The translations under genes and the position numbers were made by a program. A stretch of 64,000 nt of DNA, taken from contig OZ037765.1 in assembly GCA_964035545.1 (NCBI GenBank), forward strand, positions 3,410,001 to 3,474,000, in the 5' to 3' direction. Positions 26 through 64,000 of this stretch are shown here, in pieces; the stretch's first letter is position 1; every line of letters starts with the position of its first letter. The notes under the pieces were generated by a model. It was not told the DNA's origin. It saw only the letters and a program-made list of their open reading frames with translations, and made no database searches. Origin of the DNA: Bugula neritina (Eukaryota; Animalia; Bryozoa).

Positions 26-3000
26 CTTGAGTTGGTAGTTCACAAATAGGAGGATTGTCAGACCATTCTCCTTTACCATCTACTAATTCACATGTGATGG
101 CAACAGGACCTTTTCTGATAAAACCCTCTTTACAATCATAATTCAGAGTGGAGCTCAGTTTCCAGCTTTTATCAACAACTGGTGTTTCAAGATTTGTTAC
201 AGATTGTGGTGTTGAGCATGTGATTGGTTGAACCACTGAAATAAAACAAATTTAAATTTCGGAAACATTTTAAAAAGGTAAAAAGAATAATAGTTTGAGC
301 TAAGGAAATGTAGTTGCCGGAAATAATGCTGTTATATAAACAGTCACATTGTCTATGCTATCTACATGCGTAATGGATCTCTTTTTCCTAGATGACAACT
401 TTTCAACAAAAACAACCATAGAGTCATATTCTTTTAGAATATCATCAGATGAATTGATGTTTGGTAAGGGTTTCCTCTGATGGGTTAACTTTATTAAATA
501 TTATTGCCGTATGTCAACATTGGTTCTAAAATATTAAAGCAATGACTTCATTTACTAGCAACAAGTGACCAAAAATGTTTAAATTACTCGAAACCTTTGG
601 CTTTATGTTTATTCCAACTCGTTAAGCTTCAAAGTTCAGAGCAGCTTGCATTAAAATTTACCTTTTAAAATTGTGGTGAGCATAAAGTTATCTACCTTCA
701 GGTTTAGTCCAGAACACAACTTCTCTGGAACTTTCTCCAAACTCATTTCCAGACAGAAGAGCTTTAACTGTACAGCTGTATTCTACTTGACTATAAAGTG
801 ATTCTATAGTAAGAGAGGTGGTAGAAGAGTCAGATGTTGTATAGTACTTCACTGAGTTCACTGTCACACTATCATTAAAGGTGTTGTTGGTTGTGATGCA
901 TGTTGCCTGTAGCCAGTAATCAAAACAGTATATAAAGTAAAGATCATTTACTTTTATCTATTTCATATTGTCATGTTTAAAAATGCTCTGTTTAAACAAG
1001 CTGCAAAAAATATGTTAATTTTTCACTTCTGGGTTAATTTAAAACAAATTCAAATGCCAAAGGTATATTGATGTGTAAGAAATGACCGAGAGCTAGCCAG
1101 TTACCAACAAAACTTATAGAGTTGAAAAAGAGAACAAAGTATGTTAAGTGTGCTTGATAACATGCAGAGCATACATAGAAGTGCACCTGAAGAAGTATAG
1201 CAATAAGTTGACTTAAACTCTAAAATTAACAAAATTGAAGTTACGCTGAACTTTTTCCTGTTCTAATTTATACTATACTCACCTGATACTGTTGAATAGA
1301 GTAGATCTTATCTGTATAGACTACAGGAGACCAGGAGATAGTAACTGAAGTAGAAGTTCTGCTGTGAACTGTCAGTTCATTTGGTGAGTTTGGGGCTATA
1401 AAATTGATATTATCGTAAGAAATGATCACTTTTATTACTCAAGAACTTTTTTTGACTATAAAAAATGTCTCAGTGTTGCTAAAATAAGTTTCAAACCAAA
1501 ATTTAGAAAGTTTCAATTTGATCTATATAATATCCATTCTTCAACCCATGACGGCTTCATTGACTATTTATAAACTTTTATTAGATGTAAATCATTTAAA
1601 AACTGCATTTATGTCTTCACTAATATAATCTTCATTATATGGTAACCTAAATCCTAATCTATGTAAGAGAAAAATAAAATATCTGAAACTATTAAAGACC
1701 TATTAACCTTTAAATCTTTAAAACACATAATTATAGAAGCACACATTATATATACACATGTATAAGCCCGCTGGCATGCACATTGCATTCATGCATATTA
1801 TAATATACTTGCAATAGCTTCTACTCACCTTTACTAGTTGTGTATTCTTCTTGCCATATTATATTCTCATGTCCATCTAGTAGTTCTACTATAACAGTCA
1901 GTTCAAATGTCACACCTTGCTGTTTAATGAAATTCCATGGGCCTGTTTTCATCTGATTGGATAATTGTCCACTTCCATAAGTTAATGTAACACTGGATAC
2001 ACAGTCATCAGCTTCCTGTTACAGAGAATGTGTTTAAATAAGTTTTGGCCTAATTTAAGAAAATAGAAGCAGAAGTAAATTGCGATGGCTTCAGAACAAT
2101 CTCAACAGTGTGAATTGTGATCAATTTGTACATTAATCATGATTATTACACAAATCTATATATTATACCCAAGTAATACACAATAATAATACTGTTTATA
2201 TGTAAATAATTGCAAAGCTATATAGGCTACTATAGGTATTACTATATACTCATATTACTCAAAACATATTCCCCAACCAAATCCTAAAACTGAAATATAA
2301 GCAAAGATAAAATATATAGACCTACTAGCAAAAGTACACTATACTCAATGCATATTCCTAACTTAATCCTAATTATCCTACAGTTATAGTGAAGTATCTA
2401 TATAACTGAAGCATTACCTTGACATATTGAACCCAACCATTGCTGAATTAAGCTTATGAAGAATAAAGCAGTAAAAATTCATCTATGTATTTCTAACTGT
2501 AGAAACCTATTTTACTTATATTATAGATAATACTATATAAGATACTTTAGAAAATTGAATAACAATATTTATATTTTGAGTAAATCTACTAAAATGGCAC
2601 ATTAAGACCGTTTCAACTACTTTCATAGTATCGAAATAATCCAATATGATATTATTATATAGTCCAAAATTCATATGATCTAAAACTATAGACTGTATAT
2701 AATAATATAGACTTACAAATGAAGGAACAGACACAGTAAATATTCTCCCTTCTTCTGGTTTCAGAATTCCACTTTCTGTTATGATGACCTTCCCAGGTGC
2801 TAATTTACCTCTTTCTGTAGAATGTAAAATATATATTCATTAGCAAAAAATATTCGTAACAGAGACAAATACTTAAGATGCAGGAGTCATTGCTCCAACC
2901 TGCAAAACTATAAAAATACAGTTAACGTACTAATCTGCTTTTAGGTAAGAATTATTTAAATAGCAATTTACCTGCACAGAACAGAGTGCTGACTGTGGAG

Positions 3001-6000
3001 ACATCTTGTGTTAACTCTTCACCATTATAATTCCTCACAGTTACTACTCTAGCATAGTGAGGTCGTTGTATATTCAGATTACTAATCACAGTCTCTCTGT
3101 AATCTATAGAAACTAATTTAGAGCTTATTATTGTGTTGAAGTTGGAGTTGTCTGAACATTCTATTTTAAAATGAGTAGTTGTGAGCTCCTGATTGGGTGT
3201 AGTAACTGGGAATTTCCATGTAATTCTGATTTCTTCTGGTGACACATCTGTGTGAGAAGATACTGGGTCTCCAGATAACTTAAAGATTTCTAAAAGTAAC
3301 AATCAGCAACTTAATTATTACACTCAACATCGGTTAACTAGTAAAAATGAAAATAATACAATTTTACCTTTTTACAATTATAGCAAACTACACTAAGTAT
3401 AGTTTAATGAGCATAAATATTATCTATATAAAATAATGGTTTATATAGATCTTATGACATTAATAAATTTAGTTTGCAGCAAAGATTTTAAACAAAGCTT
3501 GCATATAACAGCCTTTAAGTTTCAAATTTGAACCTATGAAGAGTACATCTCCAAAAGTATATACAAGTTTACACACAAAAAAACAAAACAGGTAGTTTTA
3601 TAATGCAGTTTTGTTAGTGTGGTAAACTCAGATTATAAAACAGTAGTCTAGTAAAACAAACAAAGTTTAATTTAAGTATAACAAATATTGTTATAGCCAG
3701 GACAGAATGTGATGTCATCATATTGCAATAGTAGATGGTAATAAATAAATATTATATGATCAAGAATAGCGATGCATGGTTTGATTTAAATACAAATAAA
3801 TAGCTAAACTTGTAGAAACCTACTGAATGGTGGTTATAATATTCAAGCAGATACGTGAAAACTTACTATCAGAATTTTCGCTAAACCTATACGGTTGAGG
3901 GAACAAATTAATATTTTCACATCTCCTTTGCTTAGCTAAGCTGATAATATAATTTTACACTTTGAGCAAAAAACAGTGCTTTCTTTTAAACATTCAGGTA
4001 AAAAATGGCTTCACCCTGTGAAATCTTTAATTTCAAACCTAAAGTAAAATAATATATAAGGTGAGCTAGTTTGAGCCTGATGCCTGCAGTTACAAACATG
4101 CCTGGGACATATTCTTGCAATATATATTTTGGTTTGTAGTTATTCTACAAGTTATAATAAAACAGAAAATTAAACAAGTAATTTATAAGCTATCGTGATA
4201 TAACAAATTATAGATATATGTGCCGCTGTGTGCCTATACAATGGATATTTAAGATCAAAACTTTAAGATGAGCAAATTCAAATACTATATTATATATACT
4301 ATATATATAGTTTTAGTGGCTCAACTTGCATTTAGTCACTGGCAGAACACATAATTGCAAAACTTTTTCCCTCACTGGGAATCCGACCTTAGATTTTTTT
4401 GACTTGCAAGCATGCGTGCAATGGCCAATTACACTTCTGGGATTCCTAATAACAATATTAAACTGGAAATGCTGTTTGTAAAATTGCATTTTCGGCAAAA
4501 CTATGCAATATATATGAATATTTAGTCGACAGAGATATTACTAACTGTTGAGAACACCAAGTTTGTTATGTGAATGTTTAGAGTTTTGATTATACGTGAA
4601 CTTAGCTTGCTTAATTGTAGGAAACAAAATTGTTGACTTTCTCAACTTTCAGCATAAATAAAAAACTCAAAGCTCTATACTCTGGTCTCACACGTTTCCA
4701 ACTTTCTCTCTTTCCCAACTGAGAACACAAGATTTGTTTCAATTTTCATGCCACTTGTGACTCAACCACCATACACATTTGCTGATTACGGATAACGGGC
4801 TCAAGTAGCTGTTAAAATTATGGGAAAAATATCAATCAAATTATACTTAAAAAAGCTTCAGGTTGTGCTGTGCACTTGTTATTGGTCAATAATCCACAGT
4901 TAATTGCACCAGTATAATATAATCACCTGCTATGTAGGCTCTCAGTGCTACTGCTCTAGTTTCTGTGACAACATCTGAAGCTGTGAGTCTGTCTACTCTG
5001 TCTGTTTTAGGGAAAATTATATAAGCTGGAGGATCTCCAACCACTTTAAATCTAAATGAGACGAGGTTACCTTTACAACCAGATTTACTCAAGTCTTCTA
5101 CATACAGAGCAAGAAAGTCTCCTTTTCTAACTACTTCTGTAGAGTTCTGTATAAACTGGAATCTGATTCCTCCTGTAGATGCATCTTCAGGTGTGAGTAG
5201 AGTTTCTGTAATCAGATTGAATACAGCAGAGTTACCTTCTCCTGTCTGTCTCCAGATAGCAGCATATGAGTCACAGTAGTCAGTAGAATGACCAATCATA
5301 TACTTCCAGCCAACTAAATATCCGTCTGCTTCTATCTTATAGTTGAAGAGTAACATGAGAGCAGTTCCAGCTGATCCATAATTTATTATCTTTGTGTTGG
5401 TTGTACTGTCAGAGTTATCTGAAATTAATAATATGGTATGCTTATAATAAAATTTATCATTTATCAGATATAGTGCAAATCACTTTTAATATAGGAATTT
5501 ACATGCCTGATTATCACGCTATTTAATTATCTCATATCAAATCATACTTTTTTTCTTTAAATGTGTTATATTAAAACAGTTAGTATCCTGGGTTCATCCT
5601 TAAACGTGTAGCTCAATGACCTTTTGTAATTAGCAACTTAAAGGTATATATAGAATGCAAATTACAGTATTTTGTTATATCAATTTAATTCGATGTTGCC
5701 ATGGTTCATAGGATATATTTATACTATTTATATTATGAGTTGTGCTCTCTAAAAAACTGATGACCCATTTCAGCTCAGCTGCACCTATACATTTACACTA
5801 TAACAAGTGTAATGCAATATATTGTTTGACAATATATCTCTCTGGTTTGAAAAGTGTAAAAATTATATATAGAATGCACACCAAACCTGCTACAACATGT
5901 TACTTTGAGTACATAAAAGTATATAAAAGAAGTATTGCAGTTCTCTGGTAATACCAATGGCTTCCAGCAAAGAATAAATGTATTTCGCACATTTCTTTGA

Positions 6001-7313
6001 TAAATGCGTTTTTATAACTGCATATGTTGAACAAGTAATAAAATAACCTCATTAGATAAATATTACATTTTACTAATCTATTGTATTTCATATTTGCTGC
6101 AAAGCACGTGCGTGGCAAATTTGCCCGCTATCAATAGCTTACATTTTGTTCTCTGAACACATGTATACGTTATAAATACTAAAGTTCTAACATGTTTTAA
6201 ATTCATTTTATGTTTCATACTTCAGATCCCTGAATGTGCATGATATATTAATATTAGAAAAAGACAATATCTATGCTTAAGAGTCTACATTGAGCCAAAG
6301 GACCCTATACCCTATTAACTGACAAAGAAGAAAGTGAATCAATGGATAATTTGTCTAGCAGAGAACTTACTATTAATGCTAAAGTTGCTAATGGTGATGA
6401 CAAACTTGCCTGAATATTGCTGGATTGAGGTGAACAAAATAACAGAACAAAACAAAACAACGTGCTTGGTTGTTGATAAGAATGCTGAAAAGTATTCACA
6501 GAATTACTTTAATCAGTTTAGTACCCTACCTAAGGGGACTGGCAGACCATCAAAGGTGATCGAATATGTTGGGACTTTACATAAGCTGGGAAAGCTTATT
6601 AGCTTTTCACATATCATCTCAGCTATATTATGCTTTTCCACTTTAATCATTATAGCTAATACACAAAAGCTAACTTTTTTACTATAGTACTTTTTTACTT
6701 ATAAGTACTATAAAAACCCAGCGGTTTTTCACTTATCCAGACTTGCAGTATTTCACACTTGTACTTGCAACTTATAACTCATAAGATAACTTACTTTTAC
6801 ACATCGATTTTTTTCAGTCTGCTATAATTATTATTTATTTCTCTAACTTAAAACACAACATGTTATGCAGAATAGAATATTATAATCTTGTGGAAATGCA
6901 AGATAACAAAAACATTTAATAGAAAAAGAGTATGACAAAATTTTCAGTTGTAATATTATAGGTCTCTGCTTGTGGCATGTAATTTTTCAATCTATACACT
7001 TCAATTTTGCTCAAAAATGCTTTCTCTTTTACTTTTTACATTTATATCATAATTAGGCTAATAGTTATATGCATTTGCACCCAATTTGATATCAGTTATT
7101 AGACATTTTATAATATTCGGCAAAATTTTGCTATATAAAAATTGACCAGGTTGCATACCATTAGTAATATTAGATTTGCAATAGCCTTGTTGTATACATA
7201 TAACTTGATATCAATTTGAAAATATGTAATACTTGTTTTTTATTTCAGCATGAAAATTTGTAATTTGCATGCGCTCAGTGCATCATGCATATATATGTAT
7301 ATATATATATATG

Positions 7314-7345
<32 letters not shown>

Positions 7346-7347
7346 AT

Positions 7348-7401
<54 letters not shown>

Positions 7402-8926
7402 GCGCATCGTATTCTAGCAGTACTGCTGCAGAGAAAAGTGAACTGAGACAAGTTTACCTAATCAAGTATGTAGAACCAACACCAACTATATTAGAAAATA
7501 TAACTCAAAAGGTGATTGAAGCAAATTTTGGGTTAATTCTTTTTTGTTTATGTAGAGTTTTGCTAATATTAATTAAAAACTATTTATCAACATTTACTTG
7601 GTTTTGCTACAAGTTTTCATAAGTTTCTTGTTTTTATCAATTTTAAAAATAAATCAAAGTTGCTATAATAACTAAATCTAGTTCAATAATTGAACGTATG
7701 AATTTTTAAACTAGGGTGAAAAATTTTCAATCAAAAAGCTGTAGCTATAAAAAATCAAAATTTTCACTCATACCTGAATACCAGAGAGGGAGGTTAAAGT
7801 ACTGATAGTCTGTATGTTTTTCTGCTGTCACTCCGGTATCATCTGATCTCTTATTGACAATCTCACATTGATCTCCACTCACTGACTTCACTATAGAACT
7901 ACAGTTATAACTGATGTCTTCATCTTCTAAACAGAAACTCATACAGTCTCTGAGGTCTGATGTACTTGTCTGGTTGTACTTCTGTACTCCACTGTTTAGA
8001 TAGTCACCTCTAGTAGCTGTCCATGGCTGCCATATTCCTGTGAAATACAATACTCTATGAGAGATTGTACACAAAAATCCGTTTAAAACTAGACCCATGA
8101 TTACTTGTTGCCTAAAACATTTCATCAGTCATATTTTAAGTTCAGATTTAAGGAAATATAGAAGTTGATAGATTGATCTGGTAATTTGCTATACGCACTC
8201 AAAAATCTAAAGTCTTTCTGCAACATTTATAATTTATTTGAGTATATAAAATTAAAATTTTCTCAAAACGTGCTATAGACTTACTATCTGATGTTGTATT
8301 GCAATCCTATATATAGTCACTCGATTTCATAAATACTCACCAGCACAGTTTGGTCTAACAGAGTATCTCCACTGACTATCAAAACTACTAATAGTAGCAG
8401 TCTGGGTATTCTCTGCTAACAGTTGACAGTTTCCATCCTCAATTTTGTAGTTTATTGAGGCACATATAAATGTTGTCTGTTGCATACACTGAGCTCTACA
8501 CTCATCTTCACTGTTTACAGAGAGAGTCTTTATACTACCAGATGTTATGTGAGGATCTAGTCTACCCACACCTGATGTCCAGTCACAGGTTAGTCCTGAA
8601 AATATGCATAAGATGCTATTGCCATATTTTATTCAGGTTATATAATGCTAGCTGGAAAGTTTTATGACTTAATACTAACTTTGTAAAGCTTTTTAGAATA
8701 GCAAGAGTTTACTATGGGTTTATACATTTGAGAGCTTGTATTGCTATAATAATTGCGTCAATGTGTACAATTTCTATGTATATGCTCCAAATAATGGTCA
8801 TAAAAAACTTAATAGATTGCATTATAAAAACAATATTATATCTAACATACCTTGTGCTGGTGCAGAGATAGACACAGTAACTAGAAAGAACTGCAAAGTA
8901 AAACACAAGTACAGTATTCTCTCCAT
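26..8926 (-). CDS. Receptor copy 1 (PAN-PAN-variable-FN3x3-[exon 10 decayed]-Sushi); TM/tail exon lies off the window edge
   Basis: GT-AG exons: 8851-8926 (signal peptide MERILYLCFTLQFFLVTVSISAPAQ), 8341-8595, 7774-8037, 4927-5418, 2972-3289, 2717-2814, 1829-2015, 1283-1395, 696-906, [318-525 disrupted], 26-235. All are open except exon 10 (TAA TAA at 491-496, small indels, ~187-bp deletion removing the donor). Either functional through exon skipping or a pseudogene. Confidence 0.75.
7288..7400. repeat. (TA)n microsatellite in intron 3 of copy 1
   Basis: Interrupted TA dinucleotide run, ~110 bp. Confidence 0.95.
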
Positions 8927-8951
8927 GTTAACACTACTTAGTAACGTCTAT

Positions 8952-11041: not shown

Positions 11042-11376
11042 TCAAGCTTTGTTGCTGATTGTTGGAGTATTTTCATAGCAGACATGTTCCGTCTGTTTAG
11101 TTACTTTCTCATAGACATGGTCATCTGATGTAGCCTGGAAACTTGTTGTCTCATACTCAGCACTTTGTACTGGTACATCTCGTGTACCACCCTGATTCTT
11201 AGAAGATGTAGGTGTCAGTCCCACTTCTTCATATTCAGTATTAGGCTGAGCTCTATTCTCTTCAGACTCAGTACCAGAAGATCTTCTCGCCAACATCACA
11301 ATAATAATCACTGCTTGTAAAATAATGATGAAACCCATTGGAACACCAACTGCTACTCCAACCACCCAGCCTGCTT
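11042..11376 (-). CDS. Copy 2 exon 12: transmembrane helix and Tyr-motif cytoplasmic tail
   Basis: WVVGVAVGVPMGFIIILQAVIIIVMLA followed by RR stop-transfer; tail contains YEEV, YETT, YEKV and YENT; TGA at 11042-11044. Confidence 0.9.
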
Positions 11377-14300
11377 CTAGAATAAAGATATGCATAAATT
11401 GTTGCTGGAAAAACTCTTTCTGTGTGCTAAGCTATAATCTCTCAAAGTAGGTTGCAAGCCTTTTATTAATGAAAAGCAGCGTTGCAGGCTTGCTGCTGCA
11501 ACTACTCAAAATATGAGTTTCTTCAAAATTTTCAACAACTGGGATAGTTATATATTTAAAAATAATTAGTTTACAATAACAGATAGTACTAACACATGTA
11601 CCTTTAGTTGGTAGTTCACAGGTAGGAGGATTGTCAGACCATTCTCCTTTACCATCTACTAGTTCACATGTGATGGCAACAGGACCTTTTCTTATGAACC
11701 CTTCTTTACAATCATAATTCAGAGTGGAACTCAGTTTCCAGCTTTTATCAACAACTGGTGTTTCAATATTTGCTACAGATTGTGGTGTTGAGCATGTGAT
11801 TGGTTGAACCACTGAAATGAAATAATGAAATTTTCGCAAAACTTTAAAAAGTTAAAAGGAATAACATATTTTGAGCTAAGAAAATATAGTTGCTGATTTT
11901 CAACTCACATCTTACAGACTCTGCACCAGGAATAGTGGTAACCTTCAAAACATCATCTTCAGTCTTAGCCTTGAATCCAACAGCAATGTGATATGAGTAT
12001 TGGTTGTCTAGAGGTCTGTTCCAGTAACCACCATATGTTTGGTTATCACCAACACTAAGTGAGGATGGATAGTTGGTAACCGGAAATGATGCTGTTATAT
12101 AAACAGTCACATTATTTATGCTATCAACAGTAATGGATCTCTTTTTCCTGGATGACAATTTTTCAACAACAATAACCATGGAGTCGTATCCTTTCAGAAT
12201 ATCATCAGATGAAGTGATGTTTGGTAGAGGTACTGTAATGGTTTCCCCTGATGGATTTACTGTATTATTGCCATCATTGCTGTATGTCAACACTGGCTCT
12301 AAAAAGCAATTACATTGTTTATTATATAGCAAGAGGAACTAAATATTTTTTGATTAGCCACGCTCTCTGAGTTTATATTTATTGCAAAGTTTTGTGAGTT
12401 TCAAGGTTTGAAGCTTCATGCCCTGAAATATTTTCAAAATAGTGTGAGTAAATATTTACTTACTTTCAGGTTTAGTCCAGAGCACAACTTCTCTAGAACT
12501 TTCTCCAAACTCATTTTCAGACAGAAGAGCTTTAACTGTACAGCTGTATTCTACTTGACTATAGAGTGATTCTATAGTTAGAGAGGTGGTAGAAGAGTCA
12601 GGTGTAATATTATAGTAACTCACTGAGTTTACTGTCACATTATCATTAAAGGTGTTGTTGGTTGTGATGCATGTTACCTGTAGCCAGTGATTAAAACAGT
12701 ATATAGCACAAATATCATTAACTTTTATGTATTTAATATTGTCATATTAAAAAATTCTCTGCTTAAACAAGCTGCAAAGAATATGCTAATTTTCTAATTC
12801 TAGGTTAATTTAAAACATAGTTGGATGTCAAAGGTATATTTATGTGTAAGAAATGATCGAGAGCTAGCCAGTTATCAACAAAACTTAGAGAGTTATTGAA
12901 AAAGAGAACAAAGTATGTATAAGTATGCCTAGTGACATGCAAAGTATAGAAGCAGACCTGCAGAAGTATAGCAAGTTGACTTGGCATCTAAAAACAAAAT
13001 TGAAGTTAAGCTGAAATTTTTCCTGTTTGACTTATTACTCACCTGATACTGTTGAATAGAGTAGATCTTATCTGTATAAACTACTGGATACCAGGAGATG
13101 GTAACTGAAGTAGAAGTTCTGGTGTCAACTGTCAGTCCATCTGGTGAGTTGGGTGCTGCAAAGTAAATATTATCATAGGAGATGATCACTTTTATTACTC
13201 AAAAACTTTGTTTGGTTACAAAATGTCTCAGCGCTGCCAAAAATTTTTCACCAGTATTTTGAAATTTTCAGTTTTACCCTTATTATATCCATATTTCAAC
13301 CCATGACTGCTTGATTGACTATTTTATTTTTATTATATGCAAATCTTTTAAAAGTTGCATTTATGTCTTCACTAACTATAATATAATCTTCATATAGTAA
13401 CCTAAACCCTAATTTATGTAAAAGAAAAATAAAATATTTGAAACTATTAAAGACCTATTAACTTTCAAATCTTTAAAACATCCAAACACATACACATATA
13501 GAATTATAGAAGCACGCATGTACACACATAAGCCCACTCACATGCACATTGCATGCAGGAGCAAAGTTATCTCCACACTTGCAATAACTTCTGCTCACCT
13601 TTACTAGCAGTGTATTCTTCTTGCCATATGACATTCTCATGTCCATCTTGTAAATTTACTTTAATAGTCAGTTCGAAGGTCACACCTTGCTGTTTAGTGA
13701 AAGTCCATGGTCCTGTTTTTATCTGATAGGATAATTGCCTACTTCCATAAGTTAATGTAACACTGGATATGCAGTCATCAGCTTCCTGTTACAGTGAAAG
13801 AGTTTAAATAATGTTAGGCTTACTTTAAGAAAATAGAAGCAGAATTAGTAGGTTGCTATGGCTTCAGAATAATCTCAACAGTGTGACTTTTGATTTAATT
13901 ATGAATTGAGTATGATTATTGAACAGACCTACCCAAGTAATTACACATAGCAATAGTAGTGTTTATAAGTAATTGCAGAAGTATACTCAAATATATTTTT
14001 TAACCTAATCCTAAAAGTGAAATATATATTAAATATAAACTTACAAGTGAAGGTACAAAATTTCACTCAATACAAATTATAAATTAATTCATTCACAATT
14101 AATAACCAGATTACATTGACACAGTAATAATAATGCTTGCATTATAAATAATTGCTGAAATACTATATACTCAAAATTTATTTTTAACTTAATCCTAATT
14201 TTAAAGTTACTGATGTATTTATATAGTTTAGGCTGTATAGGCGTAACCTTAACATATTATTGAACCCAATCATTGCTGAAAAGCAAAATAAGAAAAAAAG

Positions 14301-33773: not shown

Positions 33774-34983
<1,210 letters not shown>

Positions 34984-40339: not shown

Positions 40340-40386
<47 letters not shown>

Positions 40387-49100: not shown

Positions 49101-50088
49101 TCAGATTACTAATCACAGTATCTCTGTAGTCTATAGAAACTAATTTAGAGCTTATTATTGTGTTGAAGTTGGAGTTGTCTGAACATTCTATTTTAAAATG
49201 AGTAGTTGTGAGCTCCTGGTTGGGTGTAGTAGCTGGAAACTCCCATGTAACTCTGATTTCTTCTGGTGACACATCTGTGTGAGAAAATACTGGGTCTCCA
49301 GAAAGCTTTAGAATTTCTAAAAATTTTAAGAAAAAAAATTTAAAGCAGTACGCCCAAAATCACCCAACTATATTATAATGAGAATGAAGATAATACAACT
49401 TTATCCCTTTACAATTATAGCAAACTATACTAATTATAGCTTAATGAACATAAATGTTTTATATCAAATAATGGTTTATATAGATTCTTCAACGCTAATA
49501 AATATATAGTTTGCAGCCAAGATTTTAGACAAAGCTTGCATAACAGCTTTCAGGTTTCAAATGTGAACCTATAGAAAGTGCATCGCCGAAAGTATGCAAG
49601 TTTACACGAAAAACAAAAAAAGTAGTTTTATAACGCTGTTTTGTTAGTGCGTTAAACTAAGATTATATAACAGTAGTCTAATAAAACAGACAAAGTTTAT
49701 TTAGGCAAGGTTTTACGTATAACAAAATATTGTTATCGCCAGGACAGAATGTGATGTCATCATGTTGCAATAGTAGATGGTAATAAATAAATATATGATG
49801 AAGAATAGAGATGGTTTAATTTAATTACAAATGAATAGCTGAACTTGTAGAAACCAATTGAATGATGGTTAATATTCAAGCCGATATGTGAAAATTTACT
49901 ATCATAATTTTTGCTCAACTTATACTGTTGAAGGAATAAAATATTTTCACATCTCCTTTCCTTAGCTAAGCTGATAATATAACTTTACACTTTGAGAAAA
50001 AAAGAGTGCTTGCTTTTAAACATTTAGGTAAAAAATGGTTTCACCAATTTTGTGCGACTTTTAGTAAACTTAAAGTAAAATAATATAT

Positions 50089-50514
50089 GGATCATTTTAC
50101 TTAATTTAGTACACACTGGATATCTTCAGTTTTTAGCCATTTTGCACAATTTAGCTGATAATGAACATGGCTTTTTGCTCAAAACTAGTAAAGCACCAAT
50201 AAATATACCAAAACAATTAAGGTTCTTTTCAATTTTGCTTGATTTCTCATATTTTTTCTTATATATTTAGCTTATTAGGAGTGCGGACCGTTACGAAAAA
50301 AACCGTAACAGTCCGCAACCAAAATTAGCTGAATAATTGGGAAAAAACATGGGAAATGAAGCAAAATTAAAAAGAACTTTAATTTTTTAAGTGTATTTAT
50401 TGGTGTTTTACTAGTTTTGGCTAAAAAAACCCATGTCCATTAGCAGTTAAATTGTGAAAAATAGCTAAAAACTGAAGATATCCAGTGTGTACTAAATTAA
50501 GTAAAATATGACCC
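50089..50514. mobile_element. Foldback-type MITE, 426 bp, ATAT target duplication
   Basis: The whole element is an imperfect inverted repeat (arms ~210 bp, centre GCGGACCGTTACG-A7C-CGTAACAGTCCGC) with termini GGATCA...TGACCC, flanked by ATAT. Empty site TAATATATAAGG in copies 1 and 6. Confidence 0.9.
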
Positions 50515-53500
50515 ATATAAGGAAAGCTTTGAACCTGACGCCTGCAATTAAAAACATGCCTAGGATTTATTTTTGCAATATATTATATTTTGGTTGGTAG
50601 TCATTCTACAAGTTACAATGTAACAAAAAATTAAACAAGTAATTTATAAGCTACCAAGTATATAACAAATTATTCAACTTTGTACCACCATATTTACCTA
50701 TAATAGATAAAGTGAGATCAACAGTTGATGAGCAAAGTCAAATATTCAAATACTATATAATATATATACTTTATAGTTTTACTGGCTAAGAGAGAAAAAC
50801 TTACATTTAGTCACTGTCAAAACACATAATTGTAAAACTTTCTTCCCTCTCTCACTAGGATACGAACTTTATAGACCTTCGACTTGCTTAATCAGGAGCG
50901 CTAGCAAGTTACACATCACGGATTCCAAACAACAATAAAGTTCTGACTGTAAAATTGCACTTTCCACAAAACTATGCCATATATAAATATTCAGTTCATC
51001 AACATATTACTTATAGAGTTGTTATGGAACACCAAGTTTGCTATGGGAATGATTAGAGTTTTGGTTATGCGAATGTAGCTCGTAAGTGTAGGAGAAAAAT
51101 CGTTGACTTTCTAAACTTTCAGCATAAATAAAAAAGTTTAAACTCTACTTTGGCCTCACACATTTCTATATCACCCTTTCCCAACTGACGACACAAAATT
51201 TACTTCCAATTTCATACTAGTTGCGACTCAATCTCTATGCACATTTGCTGATTACAGATAATGAGCACAAGTAGCTGTAAGATCTAGCGAATAAAATATA
51301 CACCAAAATATACTTGAAATGGCCACAGATTGTGCTGTGCACTTGTTATTGGTCAATAATATATGGCTCATTGCACCAGTGTATGATAATCACCTGCTAT
51401 GTAGGCTCTCAGTGCTACTCCTCTATGTTCTTGTCTAACACTTGAAGACGTGAGTCTGTCTAATCTGTTTTTGTTATGATTAGCTGGATTACGTATATAA
51501 GCTTCAGGATCAACACCTGACAGACTTGGTCTAAATGAGACGAGGTTACCTTTACAACCAGAGCTACTCAAGTCTTCTACATACAGAGCAAGAAAGTCTC
51601 CTTTTCTAACTACTTCTGTAGAGTTCTGTACAAACTGGAATCTGATTCCTCCTGTAGATGCATATTCAGGTGTGAGTAGAGTTTCTGTAATCAGATTGAA
51701 TACAGAAAAGTTACCTTCTCCTGTCTGTCTCCAGATAGCAGCATATGAGTCACAGTAGTCAGTAGAACGACCAATCATATACTTCCAGCCAACTAAATAT
51801 CCGTCTGCTTCTATCTTGTAGTTGAAGAGTAACATGAAAGCATATCCAGCTGATCCATAATTTATTATCTTTGTGTTGGTTGCACTGTCAGAGTTATCTG
51901 AAAAACATAATATGTTATTCCTAAAATGGAATATCACCTTTATCAGGTATATAGTGCAAACCATTTTAATATAAAAATTTACATGCCTGATTATCAGGCT
52001 ATTTAATTATCTCATTACATCAAACCATACATTTTCCTATAAATGTGTTATAATAAAACATTTAGTATGCTGGGTTCATCCTTAAACGTGTAGCTCAATA
52101 ACTTTTTAGACTTAGAATTTTAAAGGTTTATAGCATGCAAATTGCAGTATGTTATTATATCAGTTTAATTCAATGTTACCATGGTACATAGGATATATTT
52201 ATGTTATATCTATTATGAGTTGTGCTCTCTAGAAAAGTGATGAACTCATTTCAGCTCAGCTGCACCTATACATTCACACTATAACCAGTGTAATGAAATA
52301 TTAATTTATATATATATCTCTGGTTTGAAAAAGTATATTGAGGATGCACGCAAAACCTGCAACAACATGTTCATTTGTGTCCAGCTTTTCAAACCTTCCA
52401 GCATGTGCTTTGCTGTCACTTTGCAACGAAGTATTACTGCATGTTCTTTCACAACAGCTTAGAGAAAGTGCATATTTTGCACATTTCTTTGATAAATGCT
52501 TTTTTATAACTTCATTATATACTGTGAAATTAATAAACTAATCTCATTTTAGTTGAATTTCACATTTTCTAATCTATTGTATTTTTGCATATCATTTCAT
52601 ATTTGCTGTAACGTATGTAGCAAATGTGCCTTCTGCCAATAGCACAATTTTTCTCTGTGCCTTCTATCTTAGCAATAGCGTACATTTTGTTCTCTATGCA
52701 CACATTTACTTTATAAATACTAAAGTTCTAGCATGTTTCAATTTTATTTTATGTTTAAAACTTCAGATCCCAGAATGCACATAATATATTATCTATATAT
52801 TAGAAAAAACCATATTTTATTTATGTAAAATGTTTACATTGAGCCAAATGACTCTGGCCTATAGTGACTGACAAAGACGTCAGTGGATTGATAGATAATT
52901 TGTCTATAGCAGACAACTGACTAGCAATGCTGAAGTTGCTTTCCATAACCTTCGTATAACTCAAGGTGATGGTGAAACTCACCTGAGTATACTGCTGGAT
53001 TGTAGTGAACAAAACAACAAAACAAAACAAAAACAAAATTGCCTGGTCGTTGCATAAGAAAGCTGAAAAGATTTCACAGAGATACCCAAATTAGTTCAGT
53101 ACACTACCTAAGGGAGCTGACAGACTATCAGAAGGTGATGGAATAGAATATTATCTTGTGGAAACACAATTGAAAACAAAAGTATTTACTGAAGAAGGAG
53201 GTATGAAAACATTTTTCAGTCAGCATAGAAAATGTACTGTATGCCTCTGCCTGGCATGTAATTTTTCATTTCATAACTAATAATGATGTTGTGCTCTGCC
53301 CACTTCCATTTTGACTGATAATGTTTTCTTTTTTACATTTTACATGCAAATCGTAATTAAGATAACATATATGCATTTGCACCCAATTTAATATTAATTA
53401 GACATTTTATAGTATTTAGAGAAATTTTGCTAACATTATTGACAAGGTTGCATATCATTGGTAAGTTTAGATTTGCAATAGCCTAAAATTGTTGTATACT

Positions 53501-55152
53501 TTCAAATTATGGTGAAAAATTCTTTTTCAATCAAGAAGCTGTAGCTATAAAAAATTAAAAGTCTCACTCATACCTGAATACCAGAGAGGGAGGTTAAAGT
53601 ACTGGTAGCCTGTATGCTTATCTGATGTCACTCCAGTATCATCTGCTCTCTTGTTGACAATCTCACATAGATCTCCACTCACTTCCTTCACTATAGAACT
53701 ACAGTTATAACTGATGTCTTCATCTTGTAAACAGAAACTCATACAGTCTCTGAGGTCTGATGTACTTATATGGCTGTACTTTTGTAATCCATAGCTCAGA
53801 TAGTAACCTTTAGTAGCTGTCCATGGCTGCCATATTCCTGTGAAATACAATACTCTATGAGAGAGTGTACACAAAAATTTGTTTATAACTAGACCTATGA
53901 TTACTTGTTGCCTAAAAACATTTCATATATCAGTCACATTTTAGGGTCAGATTTTAAGAAATATAGAATTTGATAGATTGATCTGAATGCTGTAATTTGT
54001 TGTGCGCTCTAAAATTCAAAGTCTTTCTGCAACATTTATAATTTATTTGAGTATATAACAATAATTTTTTCTCAAAACGTGCTATATAGACTTACTATAC
54101 GATGTTGTATTGCAATCCTATAGTCATTCGATTTCATATATACTCACCAGCACAGTCTGGTCTAACAGAGTATCTCCACTGACTATCAGAACTACTAATA
54201 GTGGCAGTCTGAGATTTCTCTGCTAACAGTTGACAGTTTTCATCCTCAGTTCTGTAGTTTATTGAAGCACATATAAATGATGTCTGCTGCATACACTGAG
54301 CTCTACACTCATCTTCACTGTTTACAGAGAGATTCTTTATACTACCAGATGTTATGTATGGATCTAGTCTACCCACACCTGACGTCCAGTCACAGGTTAA
54401 TTCTGAAGACATGCAATAATAAAGCATATGGTGCTTGCTATAATAGTTTAATTAGTGTACATAATATTGGCTGGGAAAGTTAAAGTATTTATGTCTAGTG
54501 TTCGTAAAGTGTTTTAGAATAGCAAGAGTTTACTATTGATTTATACATTTGAGAGCAAGTACTATAAATTCATCAGTTTATAGAATTTCTGTCCATGCTA
54601 TAATAATTTTCACAAAAAACTCTTAATAAGTCATGTTATAAAATAATGTTATCTAACATACCTTGTACTGGTGCAGAGATAGACACAGTAACTAGAAAAA
54701 ACCACAAGTGAAAACACAAATACAGTATTCTCTCCATGTTAACACTACTTAGTAATGTCTATACACTGAAGTAGTGCTAAGTAAAGTTATGCTTCTATAC
54801 AAATGAATCACAATAGCTAGAACCTTCCAATATAAGTAGGTAGCTGCTATAATAGATGCATTGTACCTAAAAGAATAAAAAGTCACAAGACTGTAGTACA
54901 AGGAGGAAGTTGAAAAATTCTATTCAAATATTTCAATCAGTATTGTGTAATAAGTATTCAATTTTCACTCTCAATGCATTTTGTTATTTTGAAGGTTGTG
55001 TCCCCTGTACTAGGTAAAAGAAGTTGCGCTGATTCGATACATTGTTAATGTTTAATAAAAGTATTGCTCCTTTATTATACATAAGACTATTAGACATGCA
55101 CCACTCAGCTAGCGAGGTAATGAAGTAAGTCAAGTAACATTAATTGAGGTTC

Positions 55153-57768: not shown

Positions 57769-60700
57769 TTACTCATACTCAGCACTTTGTACTGGTGCGT
57801 CTCCTGTAACACCCTGATTTTTAGAAGATGTAGGAGTCAGCCCCACTTCTTCATATTCAGGATTAGGCTGATCTATATTCTCTCCAGACTCAGTACCAAA
57901 AGATCTTCTCACCACCATCAAAATAATAATCACTGCTTGTAAAATAATGATGAAACCCATTGGAACACCAACTGCTACTCCAACCACCCAGCCTGTAGCA
58001 AAAGCAAAAATATATCAATTATTTGTATAAAATCTATACACATGTGTAGGCTATAAATGATTATTTTTGAAAAAGTTTAAATTTTTTGTATGTAAATAAC
58101 CATTGAGCTACAAGGTTGCTGGTACACATATTCAAAACTAAGACAATGGTTTTAATGTCAAGATGTCTAATATTTCACACTTTCCAGTTTTGGTAGACTG
58201 ACACATACAATAGACTGACACATACAGTAGACTAACACATACAGTAAACTGACACATACAGTAGACTGACACATGCAGTAGACTGACACATACAGTAGAC
58301 TGACACATACAGTGGACTGACACATACAGTAGACTGACACATACAGTAGACTGACACATACAGTAGACTGACACATACAGTAGACTGATACATACAGTAG
58401 ACTGACACATACAGTAGACTGACACATACAGTAGACTGACACATACAGCAAACTGACACATACAGTAGATTGACACATGCAGTAGACTGACACATACAGT
58501 AGACTGACACATACAGTAGACTGACACATACAGTAGACTGACACATACAGTAGACTGACACATACAGTAGAGTGACACATGCAGTAGAGTGACACATGCA
58601 GTATAGCTGACAATACATTACAAAGATGGCTGACACATACCTTGAGTTGGTAGTTCACAAATAGGAAGATTGTCAGACCATTCTGCTTTATCATCTACTA
58701 ATTGACATGTGATGATAGCAGGACCTTTTCTGATAAATCCTTCTTTACAGTTGTAAGACGCAGCAGAACCCAAGTTCCAGCTTTTATCAACAACTGGTGT
58801 TTCAATATTTGCTACAGATTGTGGTGTTGAGCATGTGATTGGTTGAACCACTAAAGCAAAAAAATATGGTAATAATGTCATTTGTTATTTTAATAAAGAT
58901 AAAATAATGCCATTTAATTTTTATTTTAGCTGATAATACAAATAACCGATAATAAAAATAGTATTTTATGTGGTTACTAAAAATTAGCTATAATTCCACA
59001 CTAGTGTGTTTCAAACTTACGTCTTGCAGACTCTGCACCAGGAATAGTGGTAAGCTTTAAAATATCATCTTCAGTCTTAGCTTTGAATCCAACAGCAATG
59101 TGATATGAGTATTGGTTGTCTAGAGGTCTGTTCCAGTATCCACCATATGTCTGGTTATCACCAACACTAAGTGAGGATGAGAAGTTGGTAACAGGAAATG
59201 ATGCTGTTATATAAACAGTCACATTGTCTATTCTATCTACAGTAATGGATCTCTTTTTCCTGGATGACAACGTTTCAACAACAATAACCATGGAGTCATA
59301 TCCTTTCAGAGCATAATCAGATGAAGTGGTGATTGGTAGAGGTACTGTAATGGTTTCTTCTGATGGGATGACTTTATTATCGTTGCTGTAGGTCAACTTT
59401 GGTTCTAAAATATTAAAATAATTACTTCATTTGCTAGCAACAACTGACTAGAAATATTTAATTTACTCAAAACTTTTGAGTTAATATTTATTACAAGTCT
59501 GTCAAGCTTTTAAATTTAGAGCAGTTTGCATTAAAATGTTTTTTTTTAAAATCTTGTGAGCATTTTATAGTTATCTACCTTCAGGCTTAGTCCAGAACAC
59601 AATTTCTCCAGAACTTTCTCCAAACTCGTTTTCAGACAGAAGAGCTTTAACTGTGCAGTTGTATTCTACTTGACTATAAAGGGATTTTATAGTTAGAAAG
59701 GTGATCGAAGATTCCGGTGTATTATGGTACCTCACTGAGTTCACTGTCACACTATCATTAAACGTGTTGTTGGTTGTGATGCACGTTACCTGTAGTCAGT
59801 TGTTGTATATTATAACAGTATATAAAGCAAATATCATTTGCTTTTATGTGTTACATATTGTCATATTCAAGAATGCTCTGCTTAAACAAGTTTACACAGC
59901 TTGATAATTTTTCACTTCTGAGTTAATTCAAAACCTGTTGGATTGTCAAAGGTACATCGATGTGTAAGAAATGAACGAGTGCTAGCAAGTTATCAACAAA
60001 ACTTATAAGATTGAAAAATAAAACAAAGTCTTTAAGTATGCTTGGTAACATGCAGAAAATATATAAAAGCACACCTAAAGAAGTATATAGCAAGTTGAAT
60101 TGGCATATAAAAACACAATTTAAGTTAAGTTGAACTCTTTCCTGTTCTAATACCAACTTGATACTGTTGAATAGAGTAGATCTTATCCGTATAAACTACA
60201 GGAGACCAGGATATGGTAACTGAAGTAGAAGTTCTGGTGTCAACTGTCAGTCCACCTGGTGAGTTGGGTGCTGCAAAGTAAATATCATCACAAAAATATT
60301 GACTGTTCTTACTCAGAAGCTCTGTTCCACTACAAAATGCCTCAGTGCTGCAAATCTATTTGAAGATTTAAGTATTATCTACATGATATACTACAAATCA
60401 ACTGAAAACTGAAATTTCATCTTCACCAATATAATCTGCATAGCAACCTAAATCTTAATTTTTATGATAGAAAAACTAAATCTTCAAAACTAATACAAAC
60501 TAATTAACTTTCACGCTTTCCAAACACAAGTACATCAAGTGCACATGTACATGCACATGCACACGCACATATTAATAACCATGCTACATGTGTGCAAAAG
60601 CCAAGTTATCTTCTCATGATATTTAAAATGTGATATAATGTACTATACTTGTAATGACTTCTACTCACCTTTACTAGTTGTGTAGTCTTCCTGCCATATT

Positions 60701-63700
60701 ATATTCTCATGTCCATCTTGTAGTTCTACTTTAATAGTCAGTTCAAAGGTCACACCTTGCTGTTTAGTGAAACTCCATGGACCTATCTTTCTCTGATTGG
60801 ATAATTGTCCACTTTCATAAGTTAATGTAACACTGGATACACAGTCATCAGCTTCCTGTTACAGTGGACATATTCACTACGTTTTCATTATCAGATTTTT
60901 TCATTCGCCCTATGGAACTATAGTTGCATTGAAGCAAAACCGAAGCCGGAAAATCAATCAAACGGCTCCATTAATAAAAATTTTACTTTGCATTATGCGG
61001 ATGATGGAAATGTTTCCTTCGATTAAATAGAATGAAACGTTTTGTGCCGGAAGCAGAAATCAGCATATGTGGAGGCTAGTTACATAGTTATACGCTATGA
61101 AAACAAAATTATAAGTTACGACTTATACAACTACTCTAAAGTGTACTTAGGCTAACAACAATTTAAATTTATCTTAGCTGCTATTTTTTAAAATAATTAT
61201 TAATCATCTTAAATTTATAAAAATTTTCCGCAAGCCAAAGCATTTCCATGGTAAAAATAAGTTGACAGTTGAAATTCACCCAATTGAAGTTCGAATAGTA
61301 TGAGTATATATATAATATTATGTTTCAAAAATAATATCTCACATAAAAATATAAACAAACTTACTAATATAGTATTATAGTTCAAAATTATTAAGATCTA
61401 AAAGTATAGACTATAAGAGAAATTAATATAGACTTACTAGTGAAGGTACAGACACAGTAACTATTCTCAGTTCTTCTGGTTTCAGAATCCCACTCTCTGT
61501 TATGGTAAAATGTCCAGGTGTTAATTTACCCCTTTCTGCAATATATATCAGAATAAACTAAACTATTTAATAGATTAATTGATGAACAAAAAGTAACACA
61601 TTTCAATTTAAAAAACGTATACTTTGTTTTATCTAGTAGTAAGAATATGTGCAAGATAAATCAACATTTTTGATGTAAAATAGACATGACTCCAATTTTT
61701 ATAGAAATCTTTTCACTGGTACACATCTTAATAATATTTTTATTATTAATACATTACATTTACCACATTATAATATTCACCCGCACAGAACAAAGAGCTG
61801 ACTGTAGAGACATCTTGTATTAACTCTTCACCATTATAATTCCTCACAGTAGATACTCTAGCATAGTGAGGTTGTTTTATATTCAGATTACTAATCACAG
61901 TCTCTCTGTAGTCTATAGAAACTAATTTAGAGCTTATTATTGTGTTGAAGTTGGAGTTGTCTGAACATTCTATTTTGAAATGAGTAGTTGTGAGCTCCTG
62001 ATTGGGTGCAGTAGCTGGGAATTCCCATGTAATTCTTACTTCTCCTGGTGACACATCAGTGTGAGAAGATACTGGGTCCCCTGATAACTTAAAGATTTCT
62101 AAAAGTAACAATTAGCAACTTAATTATTACACTCAACATCGGTTAACTAGTAAAAATGAAAATAATATAATTCTACCCTTTTACAATTATAGCAAACTAC
62201 ACTAAGTATAATTTAATGAACATAAATATTTTCTATAAACTAATGGTTTATATAGATTTTATGACATTATTAAATTTAGTTTGCAGCAAAGATTTTAAAC
62301 AAAGCTTGCATATAACAGCCTTTAAGTTTCAAATTTGAACCTATGAAGAGTACATCTCCAAATGTATATACAAGTTTACACACACAAAAACAAAACAGGT
62401 AGTTTTATAATGCAGTTTTGTTAGTGCGGTAAACTCAGATTATAAAACAGTAGTCTAGTAAAACAAACAAAGTTTAATTTATGTATAACAAATATTGTTA
62501 TAGCCAGGACAGAATGTGATGTCATCATATTGCAATAGTAGATGGTAATAAATAAATATTATATGATCAAGAATAGTGATGCATGGTTTGATTTAAATAC
62601 AAATAAATAGCTAAACTTGTAGAAACCTACTGAATGGTGGTTATAATATTCAAGCAGATACGTGAAAACTTACCATCAGAATTTTTGCTAAACCTATACG
62701 GTTGAGGGAACAAATTAATATTTTCACATCCCCTTTGCTTAGCTAAGCTGATAATATATTTTTACACTTTGAGCAAAAAACAGTGCTTTCTTTTAAACAT
62801 TCAGGTAAAAAATGGTTTCACCCTGTGAAATCTTTAATTTCAAACCTAAAGTAAAATAATATATAAGGTGAGCCAGTTTGAGCCTGATGCCTGCAGTTAC
62901 AAACATGCCTGGGACATATTCTTGCAATATATATTTTGGTTTGTAGTTATTCTACAAGTTATAATAAAACAGAAAATTAAACAAGTAATTTATAAGCTAT
63001 CGTGATATAACAAATTATTGAAATTAGGTGCACCGCTGTGTGCCTATACAATGGATATTTAAGATCAAAACTTTAAGATGAGCAAATTCAAATACTATAT
63101 TATATATACTATATAATATATAGTTTTAGTGGCTCAACTTGCATTTAGTCACTGGCAGAACACATAATTGTAAAACTTTTTCCCTCACTGGGAATCTGAC
63201 CTTAGACTTTTTTGACTTGCAAGCATGCGTGCAATGGCCAATTACACTTCTGGGATTCCTAATAACAATATTAAACTGGAAGTTCTGTTTGTAAAATTGC
63301 ATTTTCTGCGAAACTATGCAATATATATGAATATTTAGTCAACAGAGATATTACTAACTGTTGAGAACACCAAATTTGTTATGTGAATGTTTAGAGTTTT
63401 GATTATACGTGAACTTAGCTTGCTTAATTGTAGGAAACAAAATTGTTGACTTTCTCAACTTTCAGCATAAATAAAAAACTCAAAGCTCTATACTCTGGTC
63501 TCACACGTTTCCAACTTTCTCTCTTTCCCAACTGAGAACACAAGATTTGTTTCAATTTTCATGCCACTTGTGACTCAACCACCATACACATTTGCTGATT
63601 ACAGATAACGGGCTCAAGTAGCTGTTAAAATTATGGGAAAAATATCAATCAAATTATACTTAAAAAAGCTTCAGGTTGTGCTGTGCACTTGTTATTGCGG

Positions 63701-64000
63701 TCAATAATCTACAGTTAATTGCACAAGTATAATATAATCACCTGCTATGTAGGCTCTCAGTGCTACTGCTCTAGTTTCTGTGACAACATCTGAAGCTGTG
63801 AGTCTGTCTACTCTGTCTGTTTTAGGGAAAATTATATAAGCTGGAGGATCTCCAACCACTTTAAATCTAAATGAGACGAGGTTACCTCTACAACCAGATT
63901 TACTCAAGTCTTCTACATACAGAGCAAGAAAGTCTCCTTTTCTAACTACTTCTGTAGAGTTCTGTACAAACTGGAATCTGATTCCTCCTGTAGATGCATC
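57769..64000 (-). CDS. Receptor copy 6 (5' part outside window) with deletion-truncated cytoplasmic tail
   Basis: Exons 63742->64000, 61781-62098, 61438-61535, 60669-60855, 60158-60270 (weak donor CAA|GTTGGT), 59579-59789, 59021-59404, 58641-58850, 57769-57992. All visible exons are open; the tail ends SAEYE* at a deletion junction. Confidence 0.78.
58193..58612. repeat. 17-bp minisatellite (GTAGACTGACACATACA)n, ~24 units, intron 11 of copy 6
   Basis: Highly homogeneous tandem units; the source of the spurious 17-aa-periodic Cys-rich ORFs. Confidence 0.95.
60866..61040. repeat. Probable small interspersed repeat fragment, related in reverse orientation to ~15450-15555
   Basis: CACTACGTTTTCATTATC and CGGCTCCATTA at ~60875-60973 match the reverse complement of TAATGGAGCCGATAATGGAAACGTAGTG at ~15521-15547. 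Neither is present at paralogous intron sites. Confidence 0.4.

What the first reader, a model, noticed from the sequence alone, without database searches (positions are those of the whole stretch)
26..64000. Tandem array of diversified PAN-PAN-variable-FN3-Sushi receptors with Tyr-motif tails: candidate undescribed immune or allorecognition receptor cluster
Seen: at least six complete gene units, each with the same 12-exon layout; the array runs off both window ends. There is a conserved framework, a focal hypervariable region, non-catalytic tails with SH2-type tyrosines, and a mix of intact, truncated and dead copies. Known: this genomic logic characterises recognition loci such as the Hydractinia Alr complex, Botryllus fester-family genes (Sushi) and vertebrate paired-receptor clusters. 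Inference: I do not recognise this domain combination as a named family, so it may be a lineage-specific self/non-self or pathogen recognition system.
Basis: partly seen in the sequence, partly recalled or inferred. Interest (0 to 1): 0.88.

Follow-up and report, generated by a model that had tools for sequence, protein, structure and literature searches.

The report
Bryozoan paired receptor-phosphatase gene cluster
A colonial moss animal (Bugula) has about 32 clustered genes that put nearly the same fast-evolving, lectin-shaped outside sensor either on a short tyrosine signalling tail (the genes in this window) or on a built-in tyrosine phosphatase, which looks like a paired receptor system for recognising non-self, but no ligand, expression or function has been shown.

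Summary
The array is real: six minus-strand units share a 12-exon layout (signal peptide, PAN, PAN, unnamed jelly-roll domain, three FN3-like domains, RPTP-type juxtamembrane domain, Sushi, TM plus tyrosine tail). Only four lie wholly in the window and only two are fully intact. The genome is from the Bugula neritina complex. Of 32 copies on this chromosome, 23 have tyrosine tails and 9 carry the same ectodomain on a tandem D1/D2 tyrosine phosphatase closest to RPTP-alpha. Ectodomains of the two types are as alike as copies within a type and are recombined (PHI p=0.0005). Positive selection is concentrated in the jelly-roll domain (2dL 78, omega about 7), which folds like a lectin/carbohydrate-binding module. 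The tails have SH2-type tyrosines but no canonical ITAM or ITIM. Best reading: an RPTP-derived paired receptor family for variable non-self ligands, microbes more likely than allorecognition. It is not an Alr or fester homologue. Ligand, expression, allelic polymorphism and signalling direction are untested. Earlier scan reports on neighbouring windows of this cluster (s1-478506, s1-478551) reached the same reading.

The parts
22710..33487 (-). Unit U4, intact 12-exon gene (987 codons). Exons: SP 33487-33412, PAN1 33143-32889, PAN2 30925-30662, jelly-roll (VAR) 28634-28128, FN1 26417-26094, FN2a 25921-25824, FN2b 25490-25304, FN3a 24831-24719, FN3b 24348-24138, RPTP juxtamembrane 23957-23574, Sushi 23476-23267, TM+tail 23044-22710
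   Evidence: all AG/GT, one terminal stop; Pfam by exon
11042..20606 (-). Unit U5, intact 12-exon gene (VAR 17585-17088; RPTP juxtamembrane 12298-11909; Sushi 11811-11602; TM+tail 11376-11042)
45346..54737 (-). Unit U2, all 12 exons, one in-frame TAA in exon 9 (FN3b, 47286-47076); young pseudogene or truncated secreted form
36682..43246 (-). Unit U3, pseudogene: stop in PAN1, most of PAN2 deleted with its acceptor, stop in exon 10, frameshift in the TM exon
26..8926 (-). Unit U6: exons 1-9 and Sushi (235-26) open; exon 10 (about 525-300) has a stop and has lost its 3' end and donor. Flanking exons share phase 1, so skipping would keep the frame. TM+tail exon lies just left of the window (C1:3,409,407-3,409,735)
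57769..64000 (-). Unit U1, cut by the right end (VAR from 64233 to 63742, then FN1 to Sushi open). TM exon 57992-57769 is shortened by a deletion that stops the tail after the second tyrosine; PAN2 beyond the window has a 4-bp insertion
28128..28634 (-). VAR domain (U4 copy): 169-aa beta jelly roll without a Pfam family, lectin/CBM-like fold; carries the positively selected sites (19, 112, 126-138, 156-159)
23574..23957 (-). RPTP-type membrane-proximal domain (PF23144) with RKKR furin-type site, shared at 84-91% aa identity with the phosphatase-bearing copies
22710..23044 (-). TM helix and 81-aa tail with four tyrosines (YEEV, YET/YEI, DDHxYEKV, YEN); no canonical ITAM or ITIM
2966..5185 (-). 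2.2-kb tract 96.9% identical to 61775-64000 (FN1, intron, VAR) against about 80% for the flanks: recent conversion or duplication tract between U6 and U1
45866..46183 (.). 17-bp minisatellite (18.6 copies) in the Sushi-TM intron of U2
58193..58617 (.). Same 17-bp minisatellite (25 copies) in the Sushi-TM intron of U1

Best explanation
The window is part of an RPTP-derived paired receptor family of cheilostome bryozoans. One ectodomain (PAN-PAN-lectin-like jelly roll on an FN3 stalk) is kept similar across about 32 genes by recombination while chosen residues of the jelly roll diversify. It is attached either to a D1/D2 tyrosine phosphatase (9 genes) or to Sushi/TM plus a short tyrosine tail (23 genes, including this window). 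Likely working: a variable outside ligand, most likely a microbial surface glycan or adhesin, clusters the receptors. A Src-family kinase phosphorylates the tail tyrosines, which recruit SH2 proteins (YEEV Src-type, YEN Grb2-type, acidic DDHxYEKV hemITAM-like). The phosphatase arm binds the same ligand and sets the threshold. Shown: architecture, shared and recombined ectodomains, positive selection, intact catalytic motifs, tail motifs. Inferred: ligand type, phosphorylation, co-expression, and whether the phosphatase opposes or primes the tail-type receptors.
For: 9 PTP-bearing copies with the same ectodomain at C1 3.95-4.23 Mb, matching GenBank KAF6029364.1. NRFKNI, WPD, CSAGVGRTG and MVQT motifs present in all 5 fetched PTP copies. 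Tail-vs-PTP exon identity equals tail-vs-tail identity, e.g. VAR 89.9 vs 90.8%. PHI p=0.0005. AU tests reject a tail-type clade for PAN (0.023), VAR (0.042) and FN1 (0.044). M2a vs M1a for VAR: 2dL 78 (61 without the indel stretch), omega about 7; FN1 and exon 10 not significant; still significant on three segments with their own trees (p 0.018, 0.015, 0.005). VAR folds like lectin/CBM modules. Ectodomain lesions in 4/6 tail-type vs 0/5 PTP-type copies, p=0.045. D[DN]HxYEK tail motif shared with Watersipora at 36% VAR identity. The same signs (gene conversion of ectodomains, diversifying selection) mark vertebrate paired pathogen receptors (PMC5112662).
Against: No canonical ITAM or ITIM. The PTP arm is closest to RPTP-alpha and keeps its C-terminal DY(S/A)NF motif; RPTP-alpha activates Src (PMC7959691), so 'inhibitory arm' is not safe. 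AU tests do not reject separate clades for FN2-3 (0.17) or exon 10 (0.054), and the three rejections are marginal and uncorrected. Recombination can inflate codon-model tests, and mine is a home-made implementation with fixed branch proportions. The fold match is middling (Z 10.5 and 8.1, rmsd 3.5) and a shared fold shows no function. The lesion contrast rests on 11 genes.
Confidence: 0.58

Rival explanations
1. Allorecognition locus: the variable ectodomains bind homophilically or allele-specifically between touching colonies (as R2B RPTPs and Alr1/Alr2 do), and the phosphatase and tail arms weigh fusion against rejection.
For: Colonial encrusting animal; bryozoans are listed as capable of allorecognition (PMC9546547). 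RPTP stalk of the R2B type, whose members bind homophilically (PMC7959691). Cluster logic like Alr and FF/FcoR.
Against: No allelic data. The only second assembly is about 13% divergent even in the flanking gene, so it is a sibling lineage and not an allele set. No MAM or Ig domain. The lectin-like fold and paralogue-level selection fit foreign ligands at least as well. Earlier scan notes describe other variable receptor clusters in this genome (unchecked), so this one is not singled out.
Confidence: 0.17
2. Decoy or dominant-negative copies: the RPTP is the working receptor and is exploited by a pathogen; the tail-type genes are expendable decoys or competitors that soak up ligand, and their tyrosines matter little.
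For: 4 of 6 tail-type units carry lesions. One could yield a secreted ectodomain. The RKKR site allows shedding. Tail omega 0.63, CI 0.37-1.14.
Against: All four tyrosines are kept in the four full tails, some copies repeat the tyrosine module, and the DHxYEK motif recurs in the C2 copy and in Watersipora.
Confidence: 0.15
3. Non-immune role (adhesion, gamete recognition, larval settlement or symbiont handling) with a largely neutral tandem expansion in a genome where RPTP arrays are common.
For: Several other PTP-exon clusters exist in this genome (C3, C5, C6). PAN domains occur in many non-immune proteins (own knowledge). Whole-exon omega never exceeds 1.
Against: Site-specific positive selection confined to the membrane-distal domains is not expected from neutral expansion, although gamete recognition would also give it.
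Confidence: 0.1

Closest known systems
Vertebrate paired receptors (CEACAM1/CEACAM3, Siglec-11/16, CD300A/C)
   Same: Near-identical ectodomains on two different cytoplasmic outputs, recombination between types, diversifying selection on the distal domain, faster decay of the non-phosphatase arm (PMC5112662; abstracts).
   Different: No Ig domains and no homology. The second arm carries its own D1/D2 phosphatase instead of an ITIM that recruits SHP-1/2. The tails lack a canonical ITAM.
Receptor tyrosine phosphatases R2B (PTPRM/K/T/U) and R4 (RPTP-alpha/epsilon)
   Same: PF23144 juxtamembrane domain with a furin-type site. The sister genes have D1/D2, best PDB match RPTP-alpha (1.6e-95), with the C-terminal DYxNF motif. 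GenBank labels two sister genes Ptprm/PTPRM.
   Different: PAN-PAN-jelly roll in place of MAM-Ig (R2B) or a short glycosylated stalk (R4). The window's genes have no phosphatase domain. Multi-copy rather than single-copy.
Hydractinia Alr family
   Same: Clustered genes and pseudogenes in a colonial animal, an FN3-like membrane-proximal domain, tyrosine tails (PMC9546547).
   Different: Alr has V-set/I-set Ig domains and canonical ITAM/ITIM; none found here. No phosphatase arm was seen in the passages read. Linkage to fusion is untested here.
Botryllus fester family and FcoR
   Same: Sushi domain, intergenic recombination, acidic hemITAM-like tyrosine motifs (PMC12582321).
   Different: FF/FcoR are Ig-superfamily proteins encoded as cognate gene pairs. 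Here the two types sit in separate blocks about 0.47 Mb apart and Sushi is the only shared domain.
Watersipora subatra XP_067947407.1 (uncharacterized)
   Same: SP-PAN-PAN-VAR-FN-FN-TM-tyrosine tail with matching exon borders and the DNHVYEK motif.
   Different: 36% VAR identity; no third FN3, juxtamembrane or Sushi domain; it has an ITIM-like VSYLEI.

Membership tests
Paired receptors (functional class) | Highly similar ectodomains on different cytoplasmic outputs | tested here: met
   Tail-vs-PTP exon identity 85-93.5% nt, equal to within-type values; map
Paired receptors (functional class) | Recombination or gene conversion linking the two types | tested here: met
   PHI p=0.0005 on 3 tail-type plus 5 PTP-type copies (also significant within PTP-type alone); AU 0.023/0.042/0.044 for distal exons, not significant for proximal ones
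Paired receptors (functional class) | Canonical ITAM on one arm and ITIM on the other | tested here: not met
   Motif scan: no Yxx[IL]x6-12Yxx[IL] and no ITIM in window tails; the other arm is an enzyme
Paired receptors (functional class) | Opposing signalling, shared ligand, co-expression | not testable with these tools
Hydractinia Alr family | V-set/I-set Ig domains | tested here: not met
   Distal domains are PAN and a jelly roll
Hydractinia Alr family | Extreme allelic polymorphism linked to fusion or rejection | tested here: inconclusive
   Second assembly is a diverged sibling lineage, flank 86-87% identical; no crosses
Botryllus fester/FcoR | N-terminal Ig-like domain plus Sushi | tested here: not met
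   Sushi present, Ig absent
Botryllus fester/FcoR | Canonical ITIM or hemITAM ([ED][ED][ED]xYxxL) | tested here: not met
   Only a looser acidic motif, DDHxYEKV
R2B RPTP (PTPRM type) | MAM-Ig-4xFN3 ectodomain | tested here: not met
R2B RPTP (PTPRM type) | Juxtamembrane Fn3_PTPRU domain with furin-type site | tested here: met
   PF23144 E 1.5e-9 and RKKR
Receptor tyrosine phosphatases | Cytoplasmic PTP domain(s) in the window's genes | tested here: not met
   No PTP exon in the window; present with intact motifs in the sister genes
Carbohydrate-binding jelly-roll modules (CBM32, F-type lectin, Cwp84 lectin-like) | Galactose-binding-domain-like fold | tested here: met
   pLDDT 91 model; Z 10.5 Bxb1 tail tip, 8.1 Cwp84, about 5 for CBMs and F-lectins; no Pfam member
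Carbohydrate-binding jelly-roll modules (CBM32, F-type lectin, Cwp84 lectin-like) | Glycan binding | not testable with these tools
   Needs a glycan array

The most novel reading that the evidence does not exclude
This is the bryozoan histocompatibility or non-self locus, built on a new signalling logic: polymorphic lectin-like sensors in which the counter-signal comes from a phosphatase fused to the same ectodomain rather than from an ITIM-recruited one.
Probability: 0.15. Interest if true: 0.92.

Novelty: new variant of a known kind. Interest (0 to 1): 0.64.

Why it matters
No recognition receptor family is characterised for bryozoans in the papers I could search; the draft-genome paper reports only weak Alr1-like hits (PMC7576161). 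Here is a defined candidate with a testable design: the same sensor on a tyrosine tail or on a phosphatase. If confirmed it would be an independent invention of paired receptors from RPTP parts, would give a function to an unnamed jelly-roll domain also seen in sponge clusters and a hemichordate protein, and would make bryozoan non-self recognition (colony fusion, handling of the bryostatin symbiont) directly testable.

Tried and rejected
Single-sequence structure prediction of VAR failed (pLDDT 34); the 78-row alignment worked. Foldseek against PDB gave nothing at E<=0.001. Full-length homologue searches returned only Bugula and Watersipora proteins; that tool sees only proteins of 0.55-1.75 times the query length, so this does not show absence elsewhere. 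Assembly artefact rejected: copies are about 80% identical in introns, carry different insertions, and occur in an independent assembly. The PTP-only codon test crashed. Cytoplasmic identities include intron overhang and were not used.
Full report
OBSERVATION. Self-comparison shows a minus-strand tandem array of about 11-12 kb period; 88% of the window has a paralogous match inside the window. Exon mapping gives six units with one 12-exon layout. The unit at 33487-22710 has canonical splice sites throughout and an open 987-codon frame; the unit at 20606-11042 is also intact. The unit at 54737-45346 has one TAA in exon 9. The unit at 43246-36682 is dead. The unit starting at 8926 has a broken exon 10 that could be skipped in frame, and its last exon lies just left of the window. 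The unit at the right end has a tail cut after two tyrosines and a 4-bp insertion in PAN2 outside the window. So 'six complete units' is overstated, but the array, the shared layout and the mix of intact and dead copies are real.

DOMAINS. Searched exon by exon: PAN_1, PAN_1, an exon with no family, three FN3-like domains (weak or no Pfam hits), PF23144 Fn3_PTPRU with an RKKR site, Sushi, then a TM helix and an 81-residue tail. The joined model was not searched. The unnamed exon (VAR) found 77 relatives by profile. With a 78-row alignment it folds confidently (pLDDT 91) into a beta jelly roll. Best matches are the Bxb1 phage tail tip (Z 10.5, rmsd 3.5, 158 aligned), a cyanophage capsid-unit chain (9.1), the Cwp84 lectin-like region (8.1), then CBMs and F-type lectins near Z 5. 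The Atlas puts it with unnamed clusters whose commonest recorded phylum is sponges (TM 0.72; feature score 0.97) and next to Lectin_like, PHR and DUF4082. This suggests, but does not show, glycan binding.

ORGANISM. The best hit's cluster holds KAF6029364.1 'Ptprm' of Bugula neritina, from assembly GCA_010799875.2. The genome here is 216 Mb, close to the 221 Mb estimate for B. neritina (PMC7576161). The flanking gene differs by 13-14% between the two assemblies, which fits the known sibling-species complex (PMC4183541, title and abstract only). The second assembly therefore cannot serve as an allele set.

THE WIDER FAMILY. The VAR exon has 32 copies on this chromosome, one on C2 and three distant ones on C3. 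Combining exon searches gives three blocks: 2.81-2.89 Mb (7 VAR copies, tail-type), 3.24-3.48 Mb (16, tail-type; the window lies in a run of nine long Sushi-bearing genes) and 3.95-4.23 Mb (9). The last block has the same ectodomain but continues into a different TM and tandem PTP D1/D2 domains. All five fetched copies keep the NRFKNI, WPD, CSAGVGRTG, MVQT and C-terminal DYSNF motifs. The closest solved structure is RPTP-alpha, including its C-terminal tyrosine motif. The distant C3 copies and a gene from an unnamed species (L036) are also PTP-type, and Watersipora has a tail-type form, so both forms exist outside this cluster. The window's long genes look like a PTP-type ectodomain, complete with its juxtamembrane domain, joined to the Sushi-TM-tail end of the short form. 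All modules are phase 1, which makes such shuffling easy. This order of events is inference; I did not root it.

EVOLUTIONARY SIGNAL. Exon identity between tail-type and PTP-type copies equals identity within types. Trees interleave the two types. A tail-type clade is rejected for PAN, VAR and FN1 (p-AU 0.023, 0.042, 0.044, uncorrected) but not for FN2-3 or exon 10. PHI indicates recombination (p=0.0005), and U1 and U6 share a 2.2-kb tract at 96.9%. Whole-exon omega is below 1 everywhere, highest in VAR (0.79) and lowest in the stalk (0.32). Site models find positive selection in VAR (2dL 78; 61 without the indel stretch; omega about 7; sites 19, 112, 126-138, 156-159), more weakly in PAN2 (p 0.002), and none in FN1 or exon 10. 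The VAR signal holds on three segments with their own trees. By strand order several of these sites should lie at the end of the jelly roll away from the stalk, near the conserved C49/C115 pair; I had no coordinates, so this is inference. Four of six tail-type units but none of five PTP-type units have lesions in the shared exons (p=0.045).

MECHANISM. The tails carry YEEV, YET/YEI, DDHxYEKV and YEN, with no canonical ITAM or ITIM. The third motif recurs in the C2 copy and in Watersipora. The likeliest working is ligand-driven clustering, Src-family phosphorylation of the tail, SH2 recruitment, and threshold setting by the phosphatase arm that binds the same ligand. This matches the genomic signature of vertebrate paired pathogen receptors (PMC5112662). 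The direction is open: RPTP-alpha dephosphorylates the inhibitory site of Src and binds Grb2 through its C-terminal tyrosine (PMC7959691), so the PTP arm could prime rather than damp the tail arm. I give 0.58 to a paired recognition system for foreign ligands, 0.17 to allorecognition, 0.15 to decoys and 0.10 to a non-immune role.

COMPARISON. It works like a paired receptor family but is not a member of Alr (Ig domains, ITAM/ITIM; PMC9546547), fester/FcoR (Ig plus Sushi, cognate pairs; PMC12582321) or R2B RPTPs (MAM-Ig). Paper searches found no description of this family or of a paired system with a built-in phosphatase arm; the library is incomplete. Two earlier scan reports on neighbouring windows of the same cluster reached the same reading. 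I had found the PTP block and written that reading before consulting them, and they are not independent support.

LIMITS. Those places were left out afterwards. Only 13 of the 32 copies on this chromosome could be read in sequence. Ligand, tissue and polymorphism are untested.

VERDICT. New variant of a known kind; interest 0.64.

Noticed in passing
window 55129-56263: 1.1-kb insertion between U1 and U2 (42% GC) whose minus strand reads like the 3' end of a LINE reverse transcriptase (family call from memory).
   Followed up: no
window 31532-32812: 1.3-kb unique insertion in the PAN1-PAN2 intron of U4, with no long ORF.
   Followed up: partly
Observed only.
   Followed up: no
L014 (C1:3,970,750-3,976,250): Gypsy-like LTR retrotransposon (gag, protease-RT-RNase H, integrase frames) between the first two PTP genes. 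Observed only.
   Followed up: no
C1:3.24-3.37 Mb, C1:2.81 and 2.89 Mb, C2:4.33 Mb: A shorter tail-type form lacking the third FN3 and the juxtamembrane domain, mostly with a more distant tail (47-80% identity); several copies at 2.83-2.88 Mb lack Sushi and repeat the tyrosine module.
   Followed up: partly
C3:4.04 and 4.07 Mb (L002, L007, L006, L001); C3:5.35 Mb (L003): Two distant tail-to-tail PTP-type paralogues (32% VAR identity) and a third locus with two VAR-FN1 modules.
   Followed up: partly
C6:8.0-8.4 Mb, C3:7.6-8.1 Mb, C5:0.5-2.3 Mb: Further tandem clusters of PTP-domain exons in this genome; their ectodomains were not examined.
   Followed up: no
L037, L039; P0073, P0059, P0052: The VAR jelly roll occurs in tandem or with Sushi, EB or PAN domains in other animals, including Glandiceps talaboti XP_077985727.1; an unnamed domain family.
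   Followed up: partly
L033:9782-14805 vs C1:3,951,000-3,954,000: The positional orthologue of the first PTP gene in the draft genome has a VAR exon closer to tail-type copies (90%) than to its orthologue (86-87%), a sign of exon turnover.
   Followed up: yes
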